Shown: one piece after another, positions 23,609 through 39,032 of the stretch
Numbering within the stretch: the stretch's first letter is position 1
Layout: every line of letters begins with the position of its first letter
IMG/VR virus record: IMGVR_UViG_3300042455_001086
Span: 124,001 to 188,000 of that record
Length of the DNA stretch: 64,000 bases
Strand: one strand, 5' to 3'
Position numbers and translations under genes: made by a program
The notes under the pieces: model-generated
The model's database searches: none
What the model saw: only the letters and a program-made list of their open reading frames with translations
What the model was told of the DNA's origin: nothing

Positions 23609-23722
23609 TTAGTAGGATTTATTTTTGTGTTTTTGTTTACGAGTGTATTCTTTTTTACTCTTTTGAACGATTGGCCTTGTTGCAGCCCAGATTTCTTGTA
23701 TTGTTATTTCTACAGTTTTCAT
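23609..23722 (-). CDS. 37-aa basic ArfA-like peptide (not in ORF track)
   Basis: MKTVEITIQEIWAATRPIVQKSKKEYTRKQKHKNKSY; own promoter at 23761-23791. Confidence 0.6.
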   Translation of the reverse strand: MKTVEITIQEIWAATRPIVQKSKKEYTRKQKHKNKSY

Positions 23723-23804
23723 TTTTATATTTTTTAAAGTTATTATCAATTATTGCCTAGCAAAGATACAAACATTTTTTTAATCTCCAAATATTTTTTT
23801 GAAA

Positions 23805-32613: not shown

Positions 32614-33212
32614 TCGGTTGGGGTTTTCTTTCGGCTTGCGATTATTTTGGACCATTTTGTTTTAAATTTCTCATAATATTTTTTCAAATCAACAAGAAAA
32701 GCAAGGTATTCCTCATCAATTTTTGTCATTGTTCCATTTATATAGACACCATTTTTTTCACCAATAGTATAGAAAAATTCAACATCAAGTTCGGTTATTT
32801 TTCCAGACCATTCAACATTGTTTTCATATAAATTAAGTTTATTAAAATCAACAAGTTCAGAAACTTCAACAACAAATTCATCCATAGTTTCTTGGAAAGC
32901 TCTTTTATCTTCAGTTGTTAATTGTAAATCTTTACTTTCCTTGCTATGTATTACCATAATACCTCCAGAAATTCTATAAGCTTTCTTTTTTTCTGACTTA
33001 TTTGATTTTTCTTCATCTTCCTCATTATCAGTTTCGGCTGTCTCATACTCTTTTGTTACCCCTTCAATTTCTTTTTCAACATCTTCTTGTTCTGTAAGTA
33101 ATTTATAATTGTTAATAATTTGTTTTGACTCACTTTCAGAAATTTGGGTTTTAAGAGCTTTTCTTGTTGCCTCCAATAATGTTTTAATTTCTTCGTATCT
33201 ACTCATCTTCAA
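32610..33212 (-). CDS. putative virion protein
   Basis: ISESESKQII...LLTEQ motif. Confidence 0.65.
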   Translation of the reverse strand: MKMSRYEEIKTLLEATRKALKTQISESESKQIINNYKLLTEQEDVEKEIEGVTKEYETAETDNEEDEEKSNKSEKKKAYRISGGIMVIHSKESKDLQLTTEDKRAFQETMDEFVVEVSELVDFNKLNLYENNVEWSGKITELDVEFFYTIGEKNGVYINGTMTKIDEEYLAFLVDLKKYYEKFKTKWSKIIASRKKTPTE

Positions 33213-33795
33213 TTTTTTTTAAAAAATATTCAAAATTAAATGATGGGTTTAAATCTGTGGAATCTGAAAAGAAATTACTTCTAGTCAAAATACCATTTGT
33301 TTTTTCCGCACCATTTATTTTGGTGTTATGTCCAACAAATTTTTTCTCAATATTAAATTCTGTAATTAATTTTTTACATAAAAATATTGTAGAATTTATT
33401 TGTTCTTCTGTGTAAGTATCCCAAAAAATAAAATCTCTCCATTTTTTTTCGTATGGCTTACCTTTATAAATACTTCCAATCCAGTTAATGTATCCATTTT
33501 TTAATGGTTCTTTTTGCAACCATCCTAAATTTTCTAAACAAATCGTGATTGCGTTTTTATCTATTAACTTACTATTAAATATTTTAGATGTTTCTTCTTG
33601 GTTCAATAACTCCAAAATCTTACCTTCTTTATCTATAAAAAAATTTGGGATTTTATCGTATTTTCTATTTCCACGATATTTTAAGGCTGTAAGATATTCT
33701 TCGGCCAAACGAGAAGAATGTAGGAGTATTATTTGTTTTTTATTTTTATTTATACCTTGACCTAAAAAATTTCCGTATTTTATTATTTTAGTCAT
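33199..33795 (-). CDS. N-acetylmuramoyl-L-alanine amidase-like (Amidase_2 fold)
   Basis: IILLHSS, FFIDKEGKI, ITICLEN, YTEEQI, TDLNP; later Zn ligands look divergent. Confidence 0.7.
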   Translation of the reverse strand: MTKIIKYGNFLGQGINKNKKQIILLHSSRLAEEYLTALKYRGNRKYDKIPNFFIDKEGKILELLNQEETSKIFNSKLIDKNAITICLENLGWLQKEPLKNGYINWIGSIYKGKPYEKKWRDFIFWDTYTEEQINSTIFLCKKLITEFNIEKKFVGHNTKINGAEKTNGILTRSNFFSDSTDLNPSFNFEYFLKKIEDE

Positions 33796-34858
33796 TAGAT
33801 TTTTTATAAACCAATCTTTTTATGTTTTGATTAACTTCTTCACCCTTTTCTTCGTTTGTTGGGATCCAGGATTTTTGTTCTGTTATATTCAATGGTTCTC
33901 TTTTGATTTCAATTGTTGGCATATCAACTACTTGGTCGGTACTTGGTCGGTACTTGGTCGGTACTTGGTCACTTTCTTGGTCACTTTCTTGGTTACCCTC
34001 ATCTACTTGGGGGGTAGTTGGGGGGTGGTTGGGGGTTGGTTGAATATTATCATCGTCCTTTTTATTCCCCTTAAACGCTTGGTTTGTTGCAATAACCAAT
34101 GTTATTGCCAATGGATCAAAAACAAAAATAAGAATCAAAATAAAAAGATTTGCCGTTCTTTTAATGTCCCAATTCAAAACCTCACTTAAATACTTTATGG
34201 TTCCCAATTCACTTCCTTCAATTTCCTGAGATTCCATATTTAATATCTCAACATCTAGATTTGTTATACTGTCATTTAAATTATCAATCTTTTTTGAAAT
34301 TGTATCTCTTCTTATTTGTGCATCTTTTAATTGATTTTCAAATGTCTTTCTATTGGCATTATTTGCTTTTGTTATGATTTGACCGGTCTTTCTATCAACT
34401 GATTGTGTGGTCGTATTATTTGATAAACCATCTCTTAATTTTGTAATATCACGATCCAAAGTTTCTTTTTCCTTGGTTAATTCATCTTTAATTTCTTCAA
34501 ATCTGGTTTTTTTAAGTTCAACATTTTTTACTTTTTTTCCACTGATTTCAAGTTTTGCAATATTCTGTTGGAAACCGGTACTTAATAAACCATAAATCCC
34601 AAGTGATGTAATGATTGAAAGTGTTACGAGGGCTGTTGTCATATATATTTTTAAAACACCATATACTTCGTCCCACTTATCGTGAAGATAAGTTGCAATT
34701 GCGAGTTTTGAGATTTCAAGAAAACTACCCATTATAATAACAGGAATTGCAACACCTGTAAAAACCACAGATAATCCAATAACACTATAGTAGGCCGCAG
34801 TTCCGGAAAGACCTAGCGCACAAAATAATAAAAACCAAGGTAATAATTTATCTTTCAT
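33788..34858 (-). CDS. multi-pass membrane protein with coiled coil
   Basis: three N-terminal TMs, coiled coil, IFVFDPLAI TM. Confidence 0.75.
   Translation of the reverse strand: MKDKLLPWFLLFCALGLSGTAAYYSVIGLSVVFTGVAIPVIIMGSFLEISKLAIATYLHDKWDEVYGVLKIYMTTALVTLSIITSLGIYGLLSTGFQQNIAKLEISGKKVKNVELKKTRFEEIKDELTKEKETLDRDITKLRDGLSNNTTTQSVDRKTGQIITKANNANRKTFENQLKDAQIRRDTISKKIDNLNDSITNLDVEILNMESQEIEGSELGTIKYLSEVLNWDIKRTANLFILILIFVFDPLAITLVIATNQAFKGNKKDDDNIQPTPNHPPTTPQVDEGNQESDQESDQVPTKYRPSTDQVVDMPTIEIKREPLNITEQKSWIPTNEEKGEEVNQNIKRLVYKKSND
33930..34042. repeat. 11-nt and 12-nt tandem repeats, including a G-tract array
   Basis: (ACTTGGTCGGT)x3, (CTTGGTCACTTT)x2, (TGGGGGKTRGT)x3. Confidence 0.8.
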
Positions 34859-35339
34859 AATGAACAATTATATTCCCTTTGACAAATTTTGTAAATGACT
34901 TTAGATTTACAAATTCCTCAACAACTAAATCACCATCACTTTTTATGATAATTAATTTATTTTCTGGTTTATATGATAAAGTTTTTGGGTATATTATTGA
35001 AGTTACAATATTGAGGGAGTATGTTCCGTTTCTATTTAGATGTGGTACAACAATAAAATCAAAAAGATTTAAATAATCCTTAACTAATATACTTGTTTTA
35101 TTACCACCTTCTAATATTGTTTTAGCAAGCTCAGAAAAAACATCCGAGAATTCAAAAATAACATCACCAATAGTATTAACATCTACTCTACCAAATCTTG
35201 TATTAGGTGCTGTGGTTTCTTGAGAATGTATTGTTGCCACAACCTTAAATGTGTCACCATCTTCATCAGTGAAATCTCCCAAATTTATTCTTGCTCCTTG
35301 TTCAAGTATTATGTTTTTTAAAACACTTAATAGTTCCAT
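34848..35339 (-). CDS. putative head-packaged protein
   Basis: MELLSVLKNIILEQ N-terminus; TATTTAT upstream. Confidence 0.7.
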   Translation of the reverse strand: MELLSVLKNIILEQGARINLGDFTDEDGDTFKVVATIHSQETTAPNTRFGRVDVNTIGDVIFEFSDVFSELAKTILEGGNKTSILVKDYLNLFDFIVVPHLNRNGTYSLNIVTSIIYPKTLSYKPENKLIIIKSDGDLVVEEFVNLKSFTKFVKGNIIVHYER

Positions 35340-35352
35340 ATGTTATAAATAT

Positions 35353-35505
35353 AAAACCCCCCGTAAAAACGGAGGGTTCAATGGATATTTAACCAATTAA
35401 GGTAGGTTTATCCAACCCGAATCTTTGCTATCACTTGATTCTCAGTGGTCAGCTTTACACTAGGAGGGCTGACATTCCTTGTTTCTGTGTTTGTGAACTA
35501 CATCA
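35353..35505 (-). ncRNA. candidate sRNA A
   Basis: promoter TTTG-N20-TATCTTTG (35512-35543), terminator 35353-35378, GC-rich, hairpins, no meaningful ORF. Confidence 0.6.
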
Positions 35506-35569
35506 ACAATACAAAGATATGTTCTTTTTTTTAATCTACCAAATAATTTTTGTGGTATTTATTATAAAT

Positions 35570-36190
35570 ATGAAAAGTTTAATTAGGAGAATTTTAAAAG
35601 AGGAAGTTGAGACTTTCAGTATTAAAGAGATTGATTTACCAGATTTTCTTTTTGAAAATTTATTAACTGAAGGAAGGTCATCAATGCCTGTTGATAAAGA
35701 GCTTGTTGAAGAATTAAATAAATATGTTAAAGAAAGATACAACTGGCCACCAAATATAAAAAATGAATGGTGTAGCGATATAAAAGAAAAAGAATTACCA
35801 AATGAAAAAATTGTAAAATATTCTTGTTCTAAAAAATTTGAGATTAAAGTTTCTGATCATTGGGCGCAAAGACTTTTTAGGCCAGAAGAACCAGAGCATC
35901 AACCTGGTGGTAGATTATCACATTTAAATATATTATACCCTAGAAAACACGAAGGGTTGAATCTTTTTTTTGATTATAAAGATTCAATTAATGAATATTT
36001 TACAAATGCAACAAGTTGGGCACCTCCACAAACAAAAAGATTTTTACTTACTTTAGGTAATTATCAAGAAATTGTTGCGGTAAGAAAAGAAGGTAAAGGT
36101 CAGTATTACGCAGAATTTATAACACAAATAAAAGGAGAAAGATTTTTTGATACGGAAGATCTAAAAAAAACAATACGTTTATATCTATAA
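35570..36190 (+). CDS. putative head-packaged protein
   Basis: start trimmed to MKSLIRRILKEE after TATTTAT (35556-35562). Confidence 0.75.
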   Translation: MKSLIRRILKEEVETFSIKEIDLPDFLFENLLTEGRSSMPVDKELVEELNKYVKERYNWPPNIKNEWCSDIKEKELPNEKIVKYSCSKKFEIKVSDHWAQRLFRPEEPEHQPGGRLSHLNILYPRKHEGLNLFFDYKDSINEYFTNATSWAPPQTKRFLLTLGNYQEIVAVRKEGKGQYYAEFITQIKGERFFDTEDLKKTIRLYL

Positions 36191-36191
36191 G

Positions 36192-36221
36192 AAAAAAAGG
36201 ACGGTTTATCCGTCCTTTTTT
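36192..36221. terminator. bidirectional terminator
   Basis: A7-GGACGG..CCGTCC-T6. Confidence 0.85.
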
Positions 36222-36400
36222 AATCTTATCTCGTAAGATTTTAACGCCCATCGAGCTGTATATGGGATAGCTGATGATTACCACATTTCTGTGTATTTTG
36301 GGGACCTCCCATCTTTTTCAATCACCCCCCCTAACCCGTAAGTTAAGAGATAAACTCCTTTTCTATACTTGGGAGCCCAAAAACAAGTTGTTATTAATTT
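36192..36400 (-). ncRNA. candidate sRNA B
   Basis: promoter TTTG-N19-TATCTTTG (36408-36438), terminator, rod-like 5' domain, 3' motif shared with sRNA A. Confidence 0.6.
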
Positions 36401-36443
36401 AATAATACAAAGATAAAAAGTTTTTTCTAATTACCAAACTTTC

Positions 36444-37277
36444 CTAATAAATATTTTTAAAAATATGTGCAATCACATCTACGGTCCATCCATTACCGAG
36501 TAAATTGAATCTTTGTGTGTTTGAAACAACGGATGTGTAATTATCTTGGACAGTTTGTAATCTCTCACATTCAAGTGGTGTAAATAACCTATCTTCTCCT
36601 GTTATAGCTTTAATTTCTATATAACATTTTGGTGTTATATTTTTACCCCATCCGTGTGCTAACTCACGAGTAAGTGTTGGTGCTTTACCAGTTGCTTTAT
36701 AGTTTTTAGCATAATTTAGTTGAGCTTGGATGGTTTTTGGTGGTAAAGTTTTATGTTTTGTTGAATAATCCAAAATATCTTTAACTAATATTCCTTTATC
36801 ATCCGGTTGTTTTAAATTAGGAATATTTGTCCAATATAATCGTTCTCTATTTTGTGCTGAAACTAAATTACTATTAATCCTGATCGGTTCAACACCCATA
36901 TGTTCTGTAATTACATTTTCGGATTCCTTTTTCATCTTAACATTCTCTAACAAGAAATATTTTGGTTGTAATTCATCTCTTAATCGAACAAACTCAAAAA
37001 ATAATTTACTTCTTGAATCCTCAAAATTCAATCCTTTACCGGCAAAGGAAAAACCTCGACACGGTGATCCACCAAACATTAAATCTATTTTTGGTAAATC
37101 AGATCCTTTTACATTTAATACATCTCCAACCTGGATTGTTTCCGGATAATTATGTTGTGTTACCTTAATCGCATATTCATCAATTTCGGAAGCATAATAT
37201 TTATCATATTTAATACCAGCTCGGTTCAAAGCAATTTGGCCACAACTCATCCCATCGAAAAGACTCAGTATATTCAT
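36444..37277 (-). CDS. DNA (cytosine-5) methyltransferase
   Basis: LSLFDG, GGSPC, LENV, QNRER, ECERLQ, LGNGW. Confidence 0.92.
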   Translation of the reverse strand: MNILSLFDGMSCGQIALNRAGIKYDKYYASEIDEYAIKVTQHNYPETIQVGDVLNVKGSDLPKIDLMFGGSPCRGFSFAGKGLNFEDSRSKLFFEFVRLRDELQPKYFLLENVKMKKESENVITEHMGVEPIRINSNLVSAQNRERLYWTNIPNLKQPDDKGILVKDILDYSTKHKTLPPKTIQAQLNYAKNYKATGKAPTLTRELAHGWGKNITPKCYIEIKAITGEDRLFTPLECERLQTVQDNYTSVVSNTQRFNLLGNGWTVDVIAHIFKNIY

Positions 37278-38188
37278 AATTCAATATTTTTTAATAAGAT
37301 ATTTTCAATATCATCAAACTTATAATATGGAATTCTAATTAATGTTATATTATTATCCATACAATATTTAGTTTTAATTTTATCTCTTTTTTTTGTTTTT
37401 TCCAATAATTCATCACCACCAAAATTTTTAACACTTTTAAAATGTAGTTCACCATCAAATTCAACACATATATTTTGTTCTGGTAAATAAAAATCAAAAG
37501 GGAGTGGTTTAATGTTTTTACAATCATCAAAAATACATTCTCTAATATATTTAATTTTTTGTTTATCTAATATTTCCACAATTTTTTCCTCACCTTTTGA
37601 ATTTTGACACTCTGGACATCCAGACTTTTTACTTAAATGGTGATTTGGTGAAACATTAAATATTCCGTGATTTTTACACACAATACTAACTTTTGTTCTA
37701 TTATTTTTATATTCTACCAAACTATAATCATATCTATTATTGTGTATCTGATTTGCCTCGTCAATAAATTCACTTGTTGTTTTTTTATAAACATTACCAC
37801 ATTTTTGACAACCAGCACCGGCCAAATGATGATGTGGTGTCTGTTTGAATAAGCCGTGTGTTGGGCAAATTATATCAATTTTTATTTCGTTTCGAACATA
37901 GACACTATTTGAATAGTCGTATTTATTATTGTGTTTTTTATTAAATCTATCAATTATATTTTTACCAATATTTTTAGATTTTGATATACTAGCGTTATTA
38001 CATTTATTACAACCAACTTTTTTACTTAAATGGTCGTTTGGTCTTATACTAAATAAACCGTGTATTGGACAAATTAAATTAACTTTAACACCATTACTAA
38101 TATAATTTACTTGTGAATATTCATATTTATCACCGTGAATTTCAATTGATTCCGAAATAAATTCTTCATTTGTTTTTCTTTTACTCAT
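37274..38188 (-). CDS. putative homing-type endonuclease (DUF723-like repeats plus Vsr/PD-(D/E)xK domain)
   Basis: three KYDYS..Y...CxxHG.F...HL...GCxxC repeats; LPFDFYLP..VEFDGELH. Confidence 0.8.
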   Translation of the reverse strand: MSKRKTNEEFISESIEIHGDKYEYSQVNYISNGVKVNLICPIHGLFSIRPNDHLSKKVGCNKCNNASISKSKNIGKNIIDRFNKKHNNKYDYSNSVYVRNEIKIDIICPTHGLFKQTPHHHLAGAGCQKCGNVYKKTTSEFIDEANQIHNNRYDYSLVEYKNNRTKVSIVCKNHGIFNVSPNHHLSKKSGCPECQNSKGEEKIVEILDKQKIKYIRECIFDDCKNIKPLPFDFYLPEQNICVEFDGELHFKSVKNFGGDELLEKTKKRDKIKTKYCMDNNITLIRIPYYKFDDIENILLKNIEL

Positions 38189-38231
38189 ACTGATAAATAT
38201 GAGTAAAGAACAAAAAAGACAAATTAAATTT

Positions 38232-39032
38232 TTATATATAATCAAATAATTCAGAACAACTATTTCTCAACTTCCTAAGCGATTTTTCCTTGATCTGACG
38301 AACGCGCTCTTTTGTCAAACCAAAATCAGAACCAATATCTTCCAAGGTTCTTGGTGTTCCAGTTAGACCAAAGTAATCACCAACGATTGTTTTTTCGCGT
38401 TCATCCAAGATGTTGAGTAATGAAAGTAATTTATCTTTTAAAATGTCTTTTGTGTCAAAACCAGCATCTGGAGCTAAAGCATCGTGATTTTCAATTAAAT
38501 CAATAAGTGTATCACCTTCCTCATTGATGTTCATATCAAGATTGATAATTGACGGAAGTCCCGCAAACTTGTCATCAAGTTTCTTTCCTGATTGATCTAC
38601 CTCTTTTTTAGCTTTTTGAAGGTCTTGAACAACATTAACCGGTAGACGGATTGTTCTTGCGTTATCATTTAAAGATTGAATAATAGATTGTTTAACCCAC
38701 CATACAGCATATGATATAAATCGTAGATCTTTACTCCAATCAAAGTTTTTAATTGCTTTCATTAATCCAAGATTTCCTTCAGCAATAAGGTCCGATAAAT
38801 CAAGACCTTGATTTTGGTATTGTTTTGCAACCGTAATTACAAAACGAAGATTTCCTCGTAATAGTTCTTCTTCAATTTTTCTTTTTTCACGATCAGAGAT
38901 TTCATCTGACTTCATTTTTATGGCCAGTTCTTTTTCACGATCAGGTGTCATAACCTTAATCTTTCTAATGTCTTTTAGGTAGTGATAAATCTCTTCCTGG
39001 TTAATTGGAACTCCGGTGTTTTTTTCCTTCAT
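38232..39032 (-). CDS. RNA polymerase sigma-70 factor (RpoD-like, no region 1.1)
   Basis: NLRFVITVAKQY..DLIAEGNLGL..YAVWW..RTIRLP; region 4 TLEDIG..LTKERVRQIKEK. Confidence 0.93.
   Translation of the reverse strand: MKEKNTGVPINQEEIYHYLKDIRKIKVMTPDREKELAIKMKSDEISDREKRKIEEELLRGNLRFVITVAKQYQNQGLDLSDLIAEGNLGLMKAIKNFDWSKDLRFISYAVWWVKQSIIQSLNDNARTIRLPVNVVQDLQKAKKEVDQSGKKLDDKFAGLPSIINLDMNINEEGDTLIDLIENHDALAPDAGFDTKDILKDKLLSLLNILDEREKTIVGDYFGLTGTPRTLEDIGSDFGLTKERVRQIKEKSLRKLRNSCSELFDYI

What the first reader, a model, noticed from the sequence alone, without database searches (positions are those of the whole stretch)
35353..36438. Two independently transcribed sRNA candidates share a ~45-nt motif with covariation and a possible pseudoknot
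Seen: each has its own TTTG-N19/20-TATCTTTG promoter and terminator, is GC-richer than its flanks and has no credible ORF. The minus-strand cores align: ACACAGAAACAAGG-AAT-GTCAGCCCTCCTAGTGTAAAGCT-GAC (35490-35448) versus ACACAGAAATGTGGTAATCATCAGCTATCCCA-TATACAGCTCGAT (36294-36250). The stem closes G-C in one and A-T in the other. Each loop can pair with the bases just downstream (AGTG/CACT; CCCA/TGGG), and an AATC...GATT hairpin follows in both. Inference: a paralogous, undescribed phage ncRNA family expressed early by host RNA polymerase, for example a protein-sponge, anti-defence or catalytic RNA.
Basis: partly seen in the sequence, partly recalled or inferred. Interest (0 to 1): 0.8.

Follow-up and report, generated by a model that had tools for sequence, protein, structure and literature searches.

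The report
Two unrelated structured phage RNAs
This stretch of a freshwater Flavobacteriales phage encodes two real, conserved, highly folded small RNAs that match no described family, but they are two different RNAs (one free-standing and always paired with an unknown protein gene, one a leader in front of a lysis-type operon), not two copies of one motif.

Summary
Both units exist as described. Each has a Bacteroidetes-type promoter and an intrinsic terminator, is richer in G+C than its flanks, and has no conserved ORF.

RNA1 (about 36400-36192, minus strand) is a new structured ncRNA family. A 7-bp helix closes a three-way junction that is followed directly by an H-type pseudoknot. In 12 distinct homologues 99.6% of cells pair, and 15 of 20 pairs change on both sides. 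Four freshwater metatranscriptomes cover RNA1 but not its neighbouring genes. RNA1 lies tail-to-tail with a 206-aa protein gene in all 8 lineages of that protein that could be examined.

RNA2 (about 35505-35352, minus strand) belongs to a different conserved family (11 homologues, 97% paired, 11 pairs changed on both sides). It always ends about 15 nt before the ORF163 gene, which is followed by a membrane-protein gene and an amidase gene. It is most likely a terminating leader.

Covariance models and profile searches in both directions find no link between the two RNAs. The shared 9-mer sits in different helices in each. Rfam has no match. The functions proposed here are inferred.

The parts
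36408..36438 (-). RNA1 promoter (TTTG -33 box, 19-nt spacer, TATCTTTG -7 box)
   Evidence: Pattern scan. The promoter is conserved in L033, L034 and L039. The same motif class precedes ATGs elsewhere in the window.
36192..36400 (-). RNA1 transcript, about 205 nt. The 5' end is inferred from the promoter; the 3' end is the terminator.
   Evidence: Metatranscriptome contigs cover 36226-36393 only. Homologues are aligned in A4.
36245..36328 (-). RNA1 conserved core. P-a 36326-36320 / 36279-36273. Variable hairpin P-b about 36311-36300. P-c 36293-36290 / 36285-36282 with a GAAA loop. Pseudoknot stem S1 36272-36269 / 36257-36254. Pseudoknot stem S2 36266-36262 / 36251-36247. Invariant CG 36246-36245.
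   Evidence: On alignment A11, 99.6% of cells pair and 15 of 20 pairs change on both sides, against 30-43% paired in slid controls. Model R1 scores it 95 bits, E 4e-19.
36222..36240 (-). RNA1 hairpin P-d (AAUCUUA / UAAGAUU)
   Evidence: Changes on both sides in L033 and L034.
36193..36221 (.). Bidirectional intrinsic terminator shared by RNA1 and the convergent ORF206
   Evidence: Terminator scan. Present, with different stem sequences, in all homologues.
35570..36190 (+). ORF206, a 206-aa protein of unknown function that is the constant partner of RNA1
   Evidence: No Pfam, PHROG or PADLOC hit. 58 homologues found. A convergent RNA1 is present in all 8 lineages examined, at 25-100% protein identity. 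AlphaFold2 pLDDT 80.7. Only a weak RelE/HigB-like fold hit, E 0.037.
35512..35543 (-). RNA2 promoter (TTTG, 20-nt spacer, TATCTTTG)
   Evidence: Conserved in all RNA2 homologues. 77% identical to the RNA1 promoter over 31 nt.
35352..35505 (-). RNA2 leader transcript, about 150 nt. 5' hairpin 35509-35479. P2 35473-35468 / 35453-35448 with a conserved 14-nt loop. P3 35447-35444 / 35435-35432. PKa 35440-35437 / 35423-35420. P4 35418-35414 / 35408-35404. PKb 35413-35410 / 35386-35383. P5 35403-35401 / 35394-35392. Terminator 35379-35354.
   Evidence: On alignment A10, 97.3% of cells pair and 11 pairs change on both sides, against 31-47% paired in slid controls. Model R2 scores it 125.8 bits. A metatranscriptome contig covers 35431-35486.
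34848..35339 (-). ORF163, the first gene after the RNA2 terminator. It overlaps the start of the next gene (membrane/coiled-coil protein, 33788-34867), which is followed by an Amidase_2 gene (33199-33795).
   Evidence: ORF list. Homologues P0001-P0020. Same gene order in relatives. Amidase_2 scores 34.3 bits.

Best explanation
The interval holds two different conserved structured RNAs of a lineage of freshwater Flavobacteriales phages. Each is made from a Bacteroidetes-type promoter and ended by an intrinsic terminator.

RNA1
- It is a free-standing RNA of about 205 nt.
- Its core is a 7-bp helix closing a three-way junction. The junction has invariant bases (GAAAAWGA, AUAC, GGU), a variable hairpin and a 4-bp hairpin with a tetraloop.
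- An H-type pseudoknot (4 bp plus 5 bp) follows directly, then an invariant CG, another hairpin and the terminator.
- It travels with the convergent ORF206 gene as a two-gene module.
- Inference: RNA1 works in trans by binding a protein, most likely ORF206 itself, as a neutralising or cofactor RNA.

RNA2
- It is an unrelated leader of about 150 nt with five helices, two pseudoknots and a terminator.
- The terminator ends about 15 nt before the ATG of ORF163, the first gene of an ORF163 / membrane protein / amidase operon.
- Inference: it is a transcription attenuator. By default RNA polymerase stops and releases the short RNA. A signal, possibly the ORF163 protein or another phage factor binding the P4/PKb/P5 domain, allows read-through.

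Shown versus inferred
- Shown: both RNAs exist, are conserved and fold as described; RNA1 is present in RNA libraries; the gene linkages hold.
- Inferred: the trans and cis roles and the binding partners.

My probabilities
- Both are real and belong to distinct structured RNA families: 0.9.
- RNA2 is a cis-acting terminating leader: 0.55.
- RNA1 is a protein-binding partner of ORF206: 0.35.
For: RNA1 structure
- 12 distinct homologues: 99.6% of 240 cells pair, 15 of 20 pairs change on both sides, and all 5 pairs of pseudoknot stem S2 covary. Slid controls pair at 30-43%.
- The most distant member (L064) keeps every helix although both pseudoknot stems have entirely different sequences.

RNA1 expression
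- In four freshwater metatranscriptomes from four studies only 36226-36393 is covered. In run X2 the word depth reaches 307 and adapters abut the fragments. ORF206 and the methylase gene have depth 0.

RNA1 linkage
- A convergent RNA1 follows ORF206 homologues of 100, 92, 66, 45, 39, 36, 29 and 25% identity.
- The genes flanking the pair differ between lineages.
- Tandem second copies occur in L035-37 and L048.

RNA2
- 11 homologues: 97.3% of cells pair and 11 pairs change on both sides.
- Mean column identity of the RNA is 85-88%, while ORF163 proteins fall to 55% identity.
- The order promoter, RNA, terminator, about 15 nt, ATG holds in all 11.
- No other promoter lies before ORF163.
- The downstream amidase is confirmed.
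- When the RNA is folded without the terminator's 3' arm, GGGUU pairs with the terminator's own AACCC, a possible anti-terminator.

Distinctness and novelty
- Reciprocal covariance-model and nhmmer searches are negative.
- Rfam has no match in the window or in homologous loci.
Against: - No experiment or strand-specific read data are available. The run data are assembled contigs, so transcript ends and read-through cannot be measured.
- RNA1 occurs without ORF206 in L044 and L048, and in L048 a small same-strand ORF follows its terminator. RNA1 could therefore also be a leader.
- The RelE-like fold of ORF206 is a weak hit only (E 0.037, no sequence support).
- RNA1 shows no complementarity to the ORF206 start region above shuffled controls.
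- For RNA2, the candidate anti-terminator is not supported by covariation. The change on both sides at alignment A10 columns 101/109 favours P4 instead.
- The ORF163 fold is unknown (pLDDT 61).
- The constant RNA1-ORF206 adjacency could be inherited gene order rather than a functional link.
Confidence: 0.55

Rival explanations
1. One reading: RNA1 and RNA2 are paralogues of one ncRNA family that share a ~45-nt hairpin-pseudoknot motif.
For: - The two promoters and first transcribed bases are clearly similar (77% over 31 nt; BLAST hit).
- Both begin with a UUGUU/AACAA-type 5' stem.
- Permissive alignment is marginally above chance (p about 0.01-0.02).
- RNA1 has duplicated in tandem elsewhere.
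- In different relatives both RNAs occupy the same slot after the sigma-factor gene.
- Both contain a hairpin whose loop pairs downstream (RNA1 S2; RNA2 PKb).
Against: - Strict alignment is at chance level.
- Covariance models and profile HMMs in both directions find nothing at E<=10.
- The shared 9-mer lies in non-equivalent helices and is not conserved in distant members of either family.
- The RNA2 pseudoknot that made the two look alike is contradicted by its variants.
- RNA2 has no three-way junction.
Confidence: 0.1
2. Both RNAs are cis-acting leaders of the lambda PR'-6S-tR' or HK022 put kind. These are short promoter-proximal terminated transcripts whose RNA, or a factor bound to it, makes RNA polymerase resistant to terminators so that downstream late or lysis genes are expressed.
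For: - RNA2 sits exactly so, ahead of ORF163, the membrane protein and the amidase.
- In L048 the second RNA1 copy is followed 20 nt later by a same-strand ORF.
- ORF206 is the only opposite-strand gene in the area, so it could be an insertion between RNA1 and the operon.
- Tandem RNA copies, each with its own terminator, fit processive antitermination.
Against: - In 8 lineages RNA1 read-through would run antisense into ORF206.
- RNA1 plus ORF206 moves as a unit between different contexts.
- There is no structural similarity to the two stem-loops of put, and no Q- or N-like gene was identified.
- No alternative pairing involves the RNA1 terminator.
Confidence: 0.15
3. RNA2 with ORF163, and/or RNA1 with ORF206, are RNA-antitoxin/protein-toxin pairs similar to type III toxin-antitoxin systems.
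For: - RNA2 has the promoter / pseudoknotted RNA / terminator / protein gene order typical of toxIN.
- The protein is never seen without its RNA, but the RNA is seen without the protein.
- ORF206 has a weak RelE/HigB/BrnT-like fold hit.
- The RNA is far more abundant than the protein mRNA.
Against: - There are no tandem repeat units.
- There is no ToxN, AbiEii or other toxin signature in Pfam or PADLOC.
- ORF163 overlaps the next gene and looks like part of an operon.
- RNA1 is convergent with its partner, not upstream of it.
Confidence: 0.12
4. RNA1 is a small self-cleaving ribozyme or a ligand-sensing riboswitch aptamer.
For: It has a compact junction-plus-pseudoknot fold with invariant unpaired bases, as aptamers and ribozymes do.
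Against: - No hit to any ribozyme or riboswitch model, even at E<=10.
- In most lineages no regulated gene lies downstream on the same strand.
- No expression platform overlaps the terminator.
- The contigs show no consistent internal end (this is weak evidence).
Confidence: 0.06

Closest known systems
Lambda PR'-tR' '6S' late leader and HK022 put RNAs (my own knowledge of lambdoid late-gene control)
   Same: A strong promoter makes a short RNA of 150-200 nt that stops at an intrinsic terminator just ahead of lysis or late genes. The short RNA accumulates.
   Different: No sequence or structure resemblance. No Q, N or Nun homologue was seen. RNA2 is a multi-helix, double-pseudoknot RNA, not two simple stem-loops. 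RNA1 is mostly followed by a convergent gene.
Type III toxin-antitoxin loci (toxIN, cptIN, tenpIN)
   Same: A pseudoknotted RNA lies beside a protein gene, separated from it by a terminator, and the RNA is in excess over the protein mRNA.
   Different: No 34-36-nt tandem repeats. The proteins are not ToxN-like. RNA1 is convergent. Toxicity was not tested.
phi29 pRNA
   Same: A phage-encoded, abundant RNA of about 170-200 nt built around a three-way junction and transcribed from a strong host-type promoter.
   Different: No Rfam Phage_pRNA match. The helix layout is different. There is no evidence of a link to packaging genes.
H-type pseudoknot aptamers (preQ1-I/II, SAM-II/V) and autoregulatory leader pseudoknots (T4 gene 32, ribosomal-protein leaders)
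   Same: A hairpin loop pairs with the 3' tail. RNA2 lies immediately upstream of the gene that it could regulate.
   Different: No model match. The RNA1 pseudoknot is fused to a three-way junction and has an unusual 4-nt spacer between S2 and S1. RNA2 ends in a terminator rather than masking a start site.
Unnamed 'DNAVirus_X' candidate structured RNAs from IMG/VR (PMC10690425)
   Same: Same data source (IMG/VR intergenic regions) and the same kind of evidence (covariation).
   Different: Overlap could not be checked because no supplementary files are held. That catalogue gives no function or context for such motifs, and its candidates average 67 nt.

Membership tests
Any Rfam 15 family | Covariance-model score at or above the family's gathering threshold | tested here: not met
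   No match in the window or in 8 homologous loci. At E<=10 only terminator-driven hits scoring well below threshold appear.
   Only marginal under permissive scoring.
   ACACAG is the 5' strand of P-c in RNA1 and the 3' strand of the 5' hairpin in RNA2.
   RNA1: yes, all 5 pairs covary. RNA2: no change on both sides and 4 breaking cells. The rival helix P3 is supported.
Type III toxin-antitoxin | Tandem direct repeats of the antitoxin RNA unit | tested here: not met
   Tandem Repeats Finder finds nothing in 35300-36460.
Type III toxin-antitoxin | Terminator between the RNA and the downstream protein gene | tested here: met
   RNA2 and ORF163, 11 of 11 lineages. Not the arrangement of RNA1.
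Type III toxin-antitoxin | Protein is an endoribonuclease toxin (ToxN, CptN or TenpN) | tested here: not met
   No Pfam or PADLOC hit for ORF163 or ORF206. The ORF163 model is too poor to search.
Transcription-attenuating leader / riboswitch | Same-strand position directly upstream of the regulated gene, with an intrinsic terminator | tested here: met
   RNA2. RNA1: only in L048.
Transcription-attenuating leader / riboswitch | A conserved, mutually exclusive anti-terminator | tested here: inconclusive
   A GGGUU:AACCC alternative exists, but covariation favours the competing P4.
Transcription-attenuating leader / riboswitch | A ligand or protein that switches the fold | not testable with these tools
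   Needs in-line probing or termination assays.
RelE/ParE-fold toxin (ORF206) | Fold and sequence match to RelE/HigB | tested here: inconclusive
   Foldseek best hit is 1wmi_A (E 0.037, probability 0.9, target-normalised TM-score 0.52) and no hit reaches E<=0.001. No sequence match.
phi29-type pRNA | Match to the Rfam Phage_pRNA model | tested here: not met
   Absent from the E<=10 list.

The most novel reading that the evidence does not exclude
RNA1 plus ORF206 is a previously unrecognised kind of two-gene RNA-protein module carried by phages. A junction-pseudoknot RNA, made in large excess, binds and controls a nuclease-like protein (possibly RelE-fold) encoded tail-to-tail with it. This would be a repeat-free, convergent analogue of type III toxin-antitoxin or anti-defence systems. 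RNA2 with ORF163 may be a second, differently wired example at the same locus.
Probability: 0.2. Interest if true: 0.8.

Novelty: new variant of a known kind. Interest (0 to 1): 0.62.

Why it matters
- Few structured non-coding RNAs of phages have a known role, and almost none are known from phages of Bacteroidota, whose transcription and translation signals differ from the model systems.
- RNA1 combines strong covariation, high abundance in environmental RNA and a strict protein partner. That makes it a well-defined target for structure determination and binding tests.
- RNA2 offers a testable case of how a Flavobacteriales phage gates a lysis-type operon.
- Both come with covariance models and homologue sets, so they could be submitted as new RNA families.

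Tried and rejected
All lie in coding TESWNGSAW-type repeats of unrelated contigs.
- The INPHARED phage collection matches only the methylase gene.
- Looser RNA1 patterns found no further IMG/VR members.
- The genome collection gave only one Flavobacteriales MAG contig.
- RNA1 pairing with the ORF206 start region is no better than shuffled controls.
- For ORF206, Pfam, PHROGs, PADLOC, PDB sequence search, the ESM Atlas and BFVD gave nothing usable.
- The ORF163 structure model is too poor to search.
- ORF163 versus ORF206 profile comparison gave only a 35-column weak match (probability 5%).
- The neighbours of RNA1 in L044 and L048 are not ORF206 relatives.
- The small ORF inside RNA1 is rejected because its start codon is lost in L033.
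- RNAalifold's long-range pairing of the RNA1 5' domain with AUGGG is rejected in favour of S2, because only S2 compensates in L048c1 and L035B.
- Literature searches found no description of these RNAs.

Full report
SETTING

The window has 29.7% G+C. It is identical to a 74-kb IMG/VR viral contig. Promoters of the Bacteroidetes type (TTTG, 17-21 nt, TAnnTTTG; the consensus is from my own knowledge of Bacteroides and Flavobacterium sigma-A promoters) occur 12 times. The best-matching ones sit a few bases before start codons of ordinary genes. All related sequences come from freshwater metagenomes. One related contig is binned in a Flavobacteriales MAG.

Gene order on the minus strand:
- sigma-70-like gene (39032-38232)
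- DUF723 zinc-ribbon protein
- C5 DNA methylase (37277-36444)
- RNA1
- ORF206, convergent on the plus strand (35570-36190)
- RNA2
- ORF163 (35339-34848)
- membrane/coiled-coil protein
- Amidase_2

THE OBSERVATION

Both promoters, both terminators, the raised G+C and the lack of a conserved ORF are real. Its significance depends on the scoring:
- Strict scoring: 488 of 2000 dinucleotide shuffles reach the observed score.
- Permissive scoring: 18 of 1000 shuffles and 11 of 1000 random window pieces reach it.

The longest direct repeat in the interval is the pair of promoters with their first transcribed bases.

RNA1 IS A REAL, NEW STRUCTURED RNA

Homologues were found through the neighbouring ORF206 and through RNA patterns. 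There are 12 distinct core sequences.

The core (window 36328-36245) consists of:
- a 7-bp helix P-a closing a three-way junction
- a variable hairpin P-b
- a 4-bp hairpin P-c, with a GAAA loop in some members and UUAG in others
- near-invariant junction strands
- immediately after P-a, an H-type pseudoknot (S1 of 4 bp, S2 of 5 bp) and an invariant CG

On alignment A11, 99.6% of 240 cells pair. Fifteen of 20 pairs change on both sides, including all five pairs of S2. Sliding the partners by 1-3 columns gives 30-43% pairing (the earlier 11-sequence count is). The most distant member, L064, keeps P-a, the junction bases, P-c, S1 and S2 with entirely different stem sequences.

A hairpin (P-d) and a terminator follow the core. 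P-d covaries within subfamilies. The only small ORF in RNA1 loses its ATG in L033. Rfam gives nothing.

EXPRESSION

Freshwater metatranscriptomes hold RNA1 words. Contigs of four runs from four studies were laid on 35000-36900.
- Only 36226-36393 is covered. In run X2 the word depth reaches 307, and Illumina adapters abut 36253/36256 and 36375.
- ORF206 and the methylase gene have zero depth.
- DNA contamination would not give this pattern. These are assembled contigs, however, so strand and exact ends are not shown.
- X2 also has a contig on the RNA2 core (35431-35486, depth 10).

CONTEXT OF RNA1

A convergent RNA1-family member directly follows the stop codon of ORF206 homologues at 100, 92, 66, 45, 39, 36, 29 and 25% identity. 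That is every lineage with enough sequence to look. The genes on either side of the pair differ between lineages.

RNA1 occurs without ORF206 in L044 and L048. Tandem second copies exist in L035-37 and L048.

ORF206 has no family assignment. A fairly confident model (pLDDT 80.7) gives only weak RelE/HigB/BrnT-like matches (best E 0.037), which I treat as a lead only. RNA1 is not complementary to the ORF206 start region beyond chance.

RNA2 IS A DIFFERENT CONSERVED RNA AND A LEADER

ORF163 has homologues down to 55% identity. All ten fetched loci, plus one more found by an RNA-only pattern scan, show the same order: promoter, RNA of about 150 nt, terminator, about 15 nt, ATG. In many relatives the order is sigma gene, RNA2, ORF163, with no RNA1 or ORF206.

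The RNA is 85-88% identical by column, far more conserved than the protein. The supported structure has a 5' hairpin, P2 with a near-invariant 14-nt loop (CCUCCUAGUGUAAA), P3, P4, P5, two pseudoknots and the terminator. The pseudoknots are PKa (AAUC/GAUU, which is invariant, so covariation cannot test it) and PKb (the P4 loop with AUCC). In total, 97.3% of cells pair and 11 pairs change on both sides, against 31-47% pairing in slid controls.

It has no compensating change, and all four variant cells break it. The same CACU instead pairs downstream in P3, where 3 of 4 pairs compensate.

When the RNA is folded without the terminator's 3' arm, GGGUU pairs with the terminator's AACCC, which would be a candidate anti-terminator. 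The compensatory change at A10 columns 101/109 supports P4 rather than this alternative, so a switch remains an inference.

ARE THE TWO RNAs RELATED?

- Model R1 (RNA1 core) finds only RNA1 in the window with filters off (95 bits); RNA2 is not hit at E<=10.
- Model R2 (RNA2 core) finds only RNA2 (126 bits). It finds nothing on RNA1 in the window and only noise-level matches in other RNA1-bearing loci.
- nhmmer profiles are negative in both directions.
- The shared ACACAG(AAA) belongs to non-equivalent helices and is not kept in distant members of either family.
- What the two do share is the promoter, the first transcribed bases and a short UUGUU/AACAA-type 5' stem. They also share the genomic slot after the sigma gene.
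- A very old common origin of the two modules cannot be excluded. ORF163 and ORF206 also show one weak 35-column profile match (probability 5%). The claimed shared motif, however, is not supported.

MECHANISM

RNA2: I commit to a terminating leader that gates the ORF163 / membrane protein / amidase operon (0.55). It resembles the lambda PR'-tR' arrangement in layout but not in sequence. The switch factor is unknown.

RNA1: I commit to a trans-acting, protein-binding RNA whose partner is ORF206 (0.35). The basis is the strict one-way co-occurrence, the mobility of the module, the abundance of the RNA and its compact fold with invariant unpaired bases.

The rivals are a cis-acting antitermination leader, a type III-like toxin-antitoxin pair, and a ribozyme or riboswitch.

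NOVELTY

No Rfam family matches and no paper describing these RNAs was found. A 2023 catalogue of 8,495 unnamed IMG/VR structured-RNA candidates may contain fragments of them. This could not be checked.

VERDICT

The objects are real and new, and RNA1 is the stronger of the two.

Noticed in passing
window 38232-39032 (-): The phage encodes a sigma-70-family protein (regions 1.2, 2 and 4). In relatives its gene lies immediately upstream of RNA1 (L034, L039) or RNA2 (L049, L051, L058). In the window a DUF723 zinc-ribbon gene and a C5 methylase gene are inserted between it and RNA1.
   Followed up: partly
L035:3145-3549, L036, L037 (= L043, L046, L047); L048:2958-3348: RNA1 occurs as two tandem copies, each with its own terminator. 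The downstream copy has no promoter of its own. L035 and L038 also carry a duplicated promoter upstream. The copies differ by compensatory changes in S1 and S2.
   Followed up: partly
window 35468-35454 and 35378-35371; L061:594-738: The motif CCCUCC (the same letters as an anti-Shine-Dalgarno sequence) occurs both in the conserved P2 loop of RNA2 and in the 5' arm of its terminator. L061 has a third copy between P4 and P5. The meaning is unknown.
   Followed up: no
window 35570-36190 (+) versus 34848-35339 (-): ORF206 and ORF163 both begin with a similar amphipathic helix and both have a helix-helix-strand-strand-strand segment. hhalign gives one weak 35-column match (E 0.007, probability 5%). 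The two RNA-protein modules may be remotely related.
   Followed up: partly
window 35431-35486, metatranscriptome run X2: An RNA-library contig matches the RNA2 core and then continues on the 5' side into unlike sequence. A relative therefore carries the same core behind a different 5' region.
   Followed up: no
window 23700-23791 (-); L033 about 2070-1960 (-); L064 about 2385-2265 (-): A small conserved ORF (MKT.EIT.QEIW...TRP...) with its own TATCTTTG-type promoter lies next to ORF206 in L033 and L064, but about 12 kb away in the window. This is another sign that these small units are shuffled between genomes.
   Followed up: no
L048:2777-2938 (-): In the Flavobacteriales MAG contig the terminator of the second RNA1 copy is followed, 20 nt later, by a same-strand ORF of about 53 aa. 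Here RNA1 is in a leader-like position.
   Followed up: no
window 37274-38245 (-): A 323-aa protein made of repeated treble-clef/DUF723 zinc-ribbon units, ending in a nuclease-like C-terminal part. It is absent from L034 and L039 but present in L060, and is probably a mobile (homing-type) insertion.
   Followed up: no
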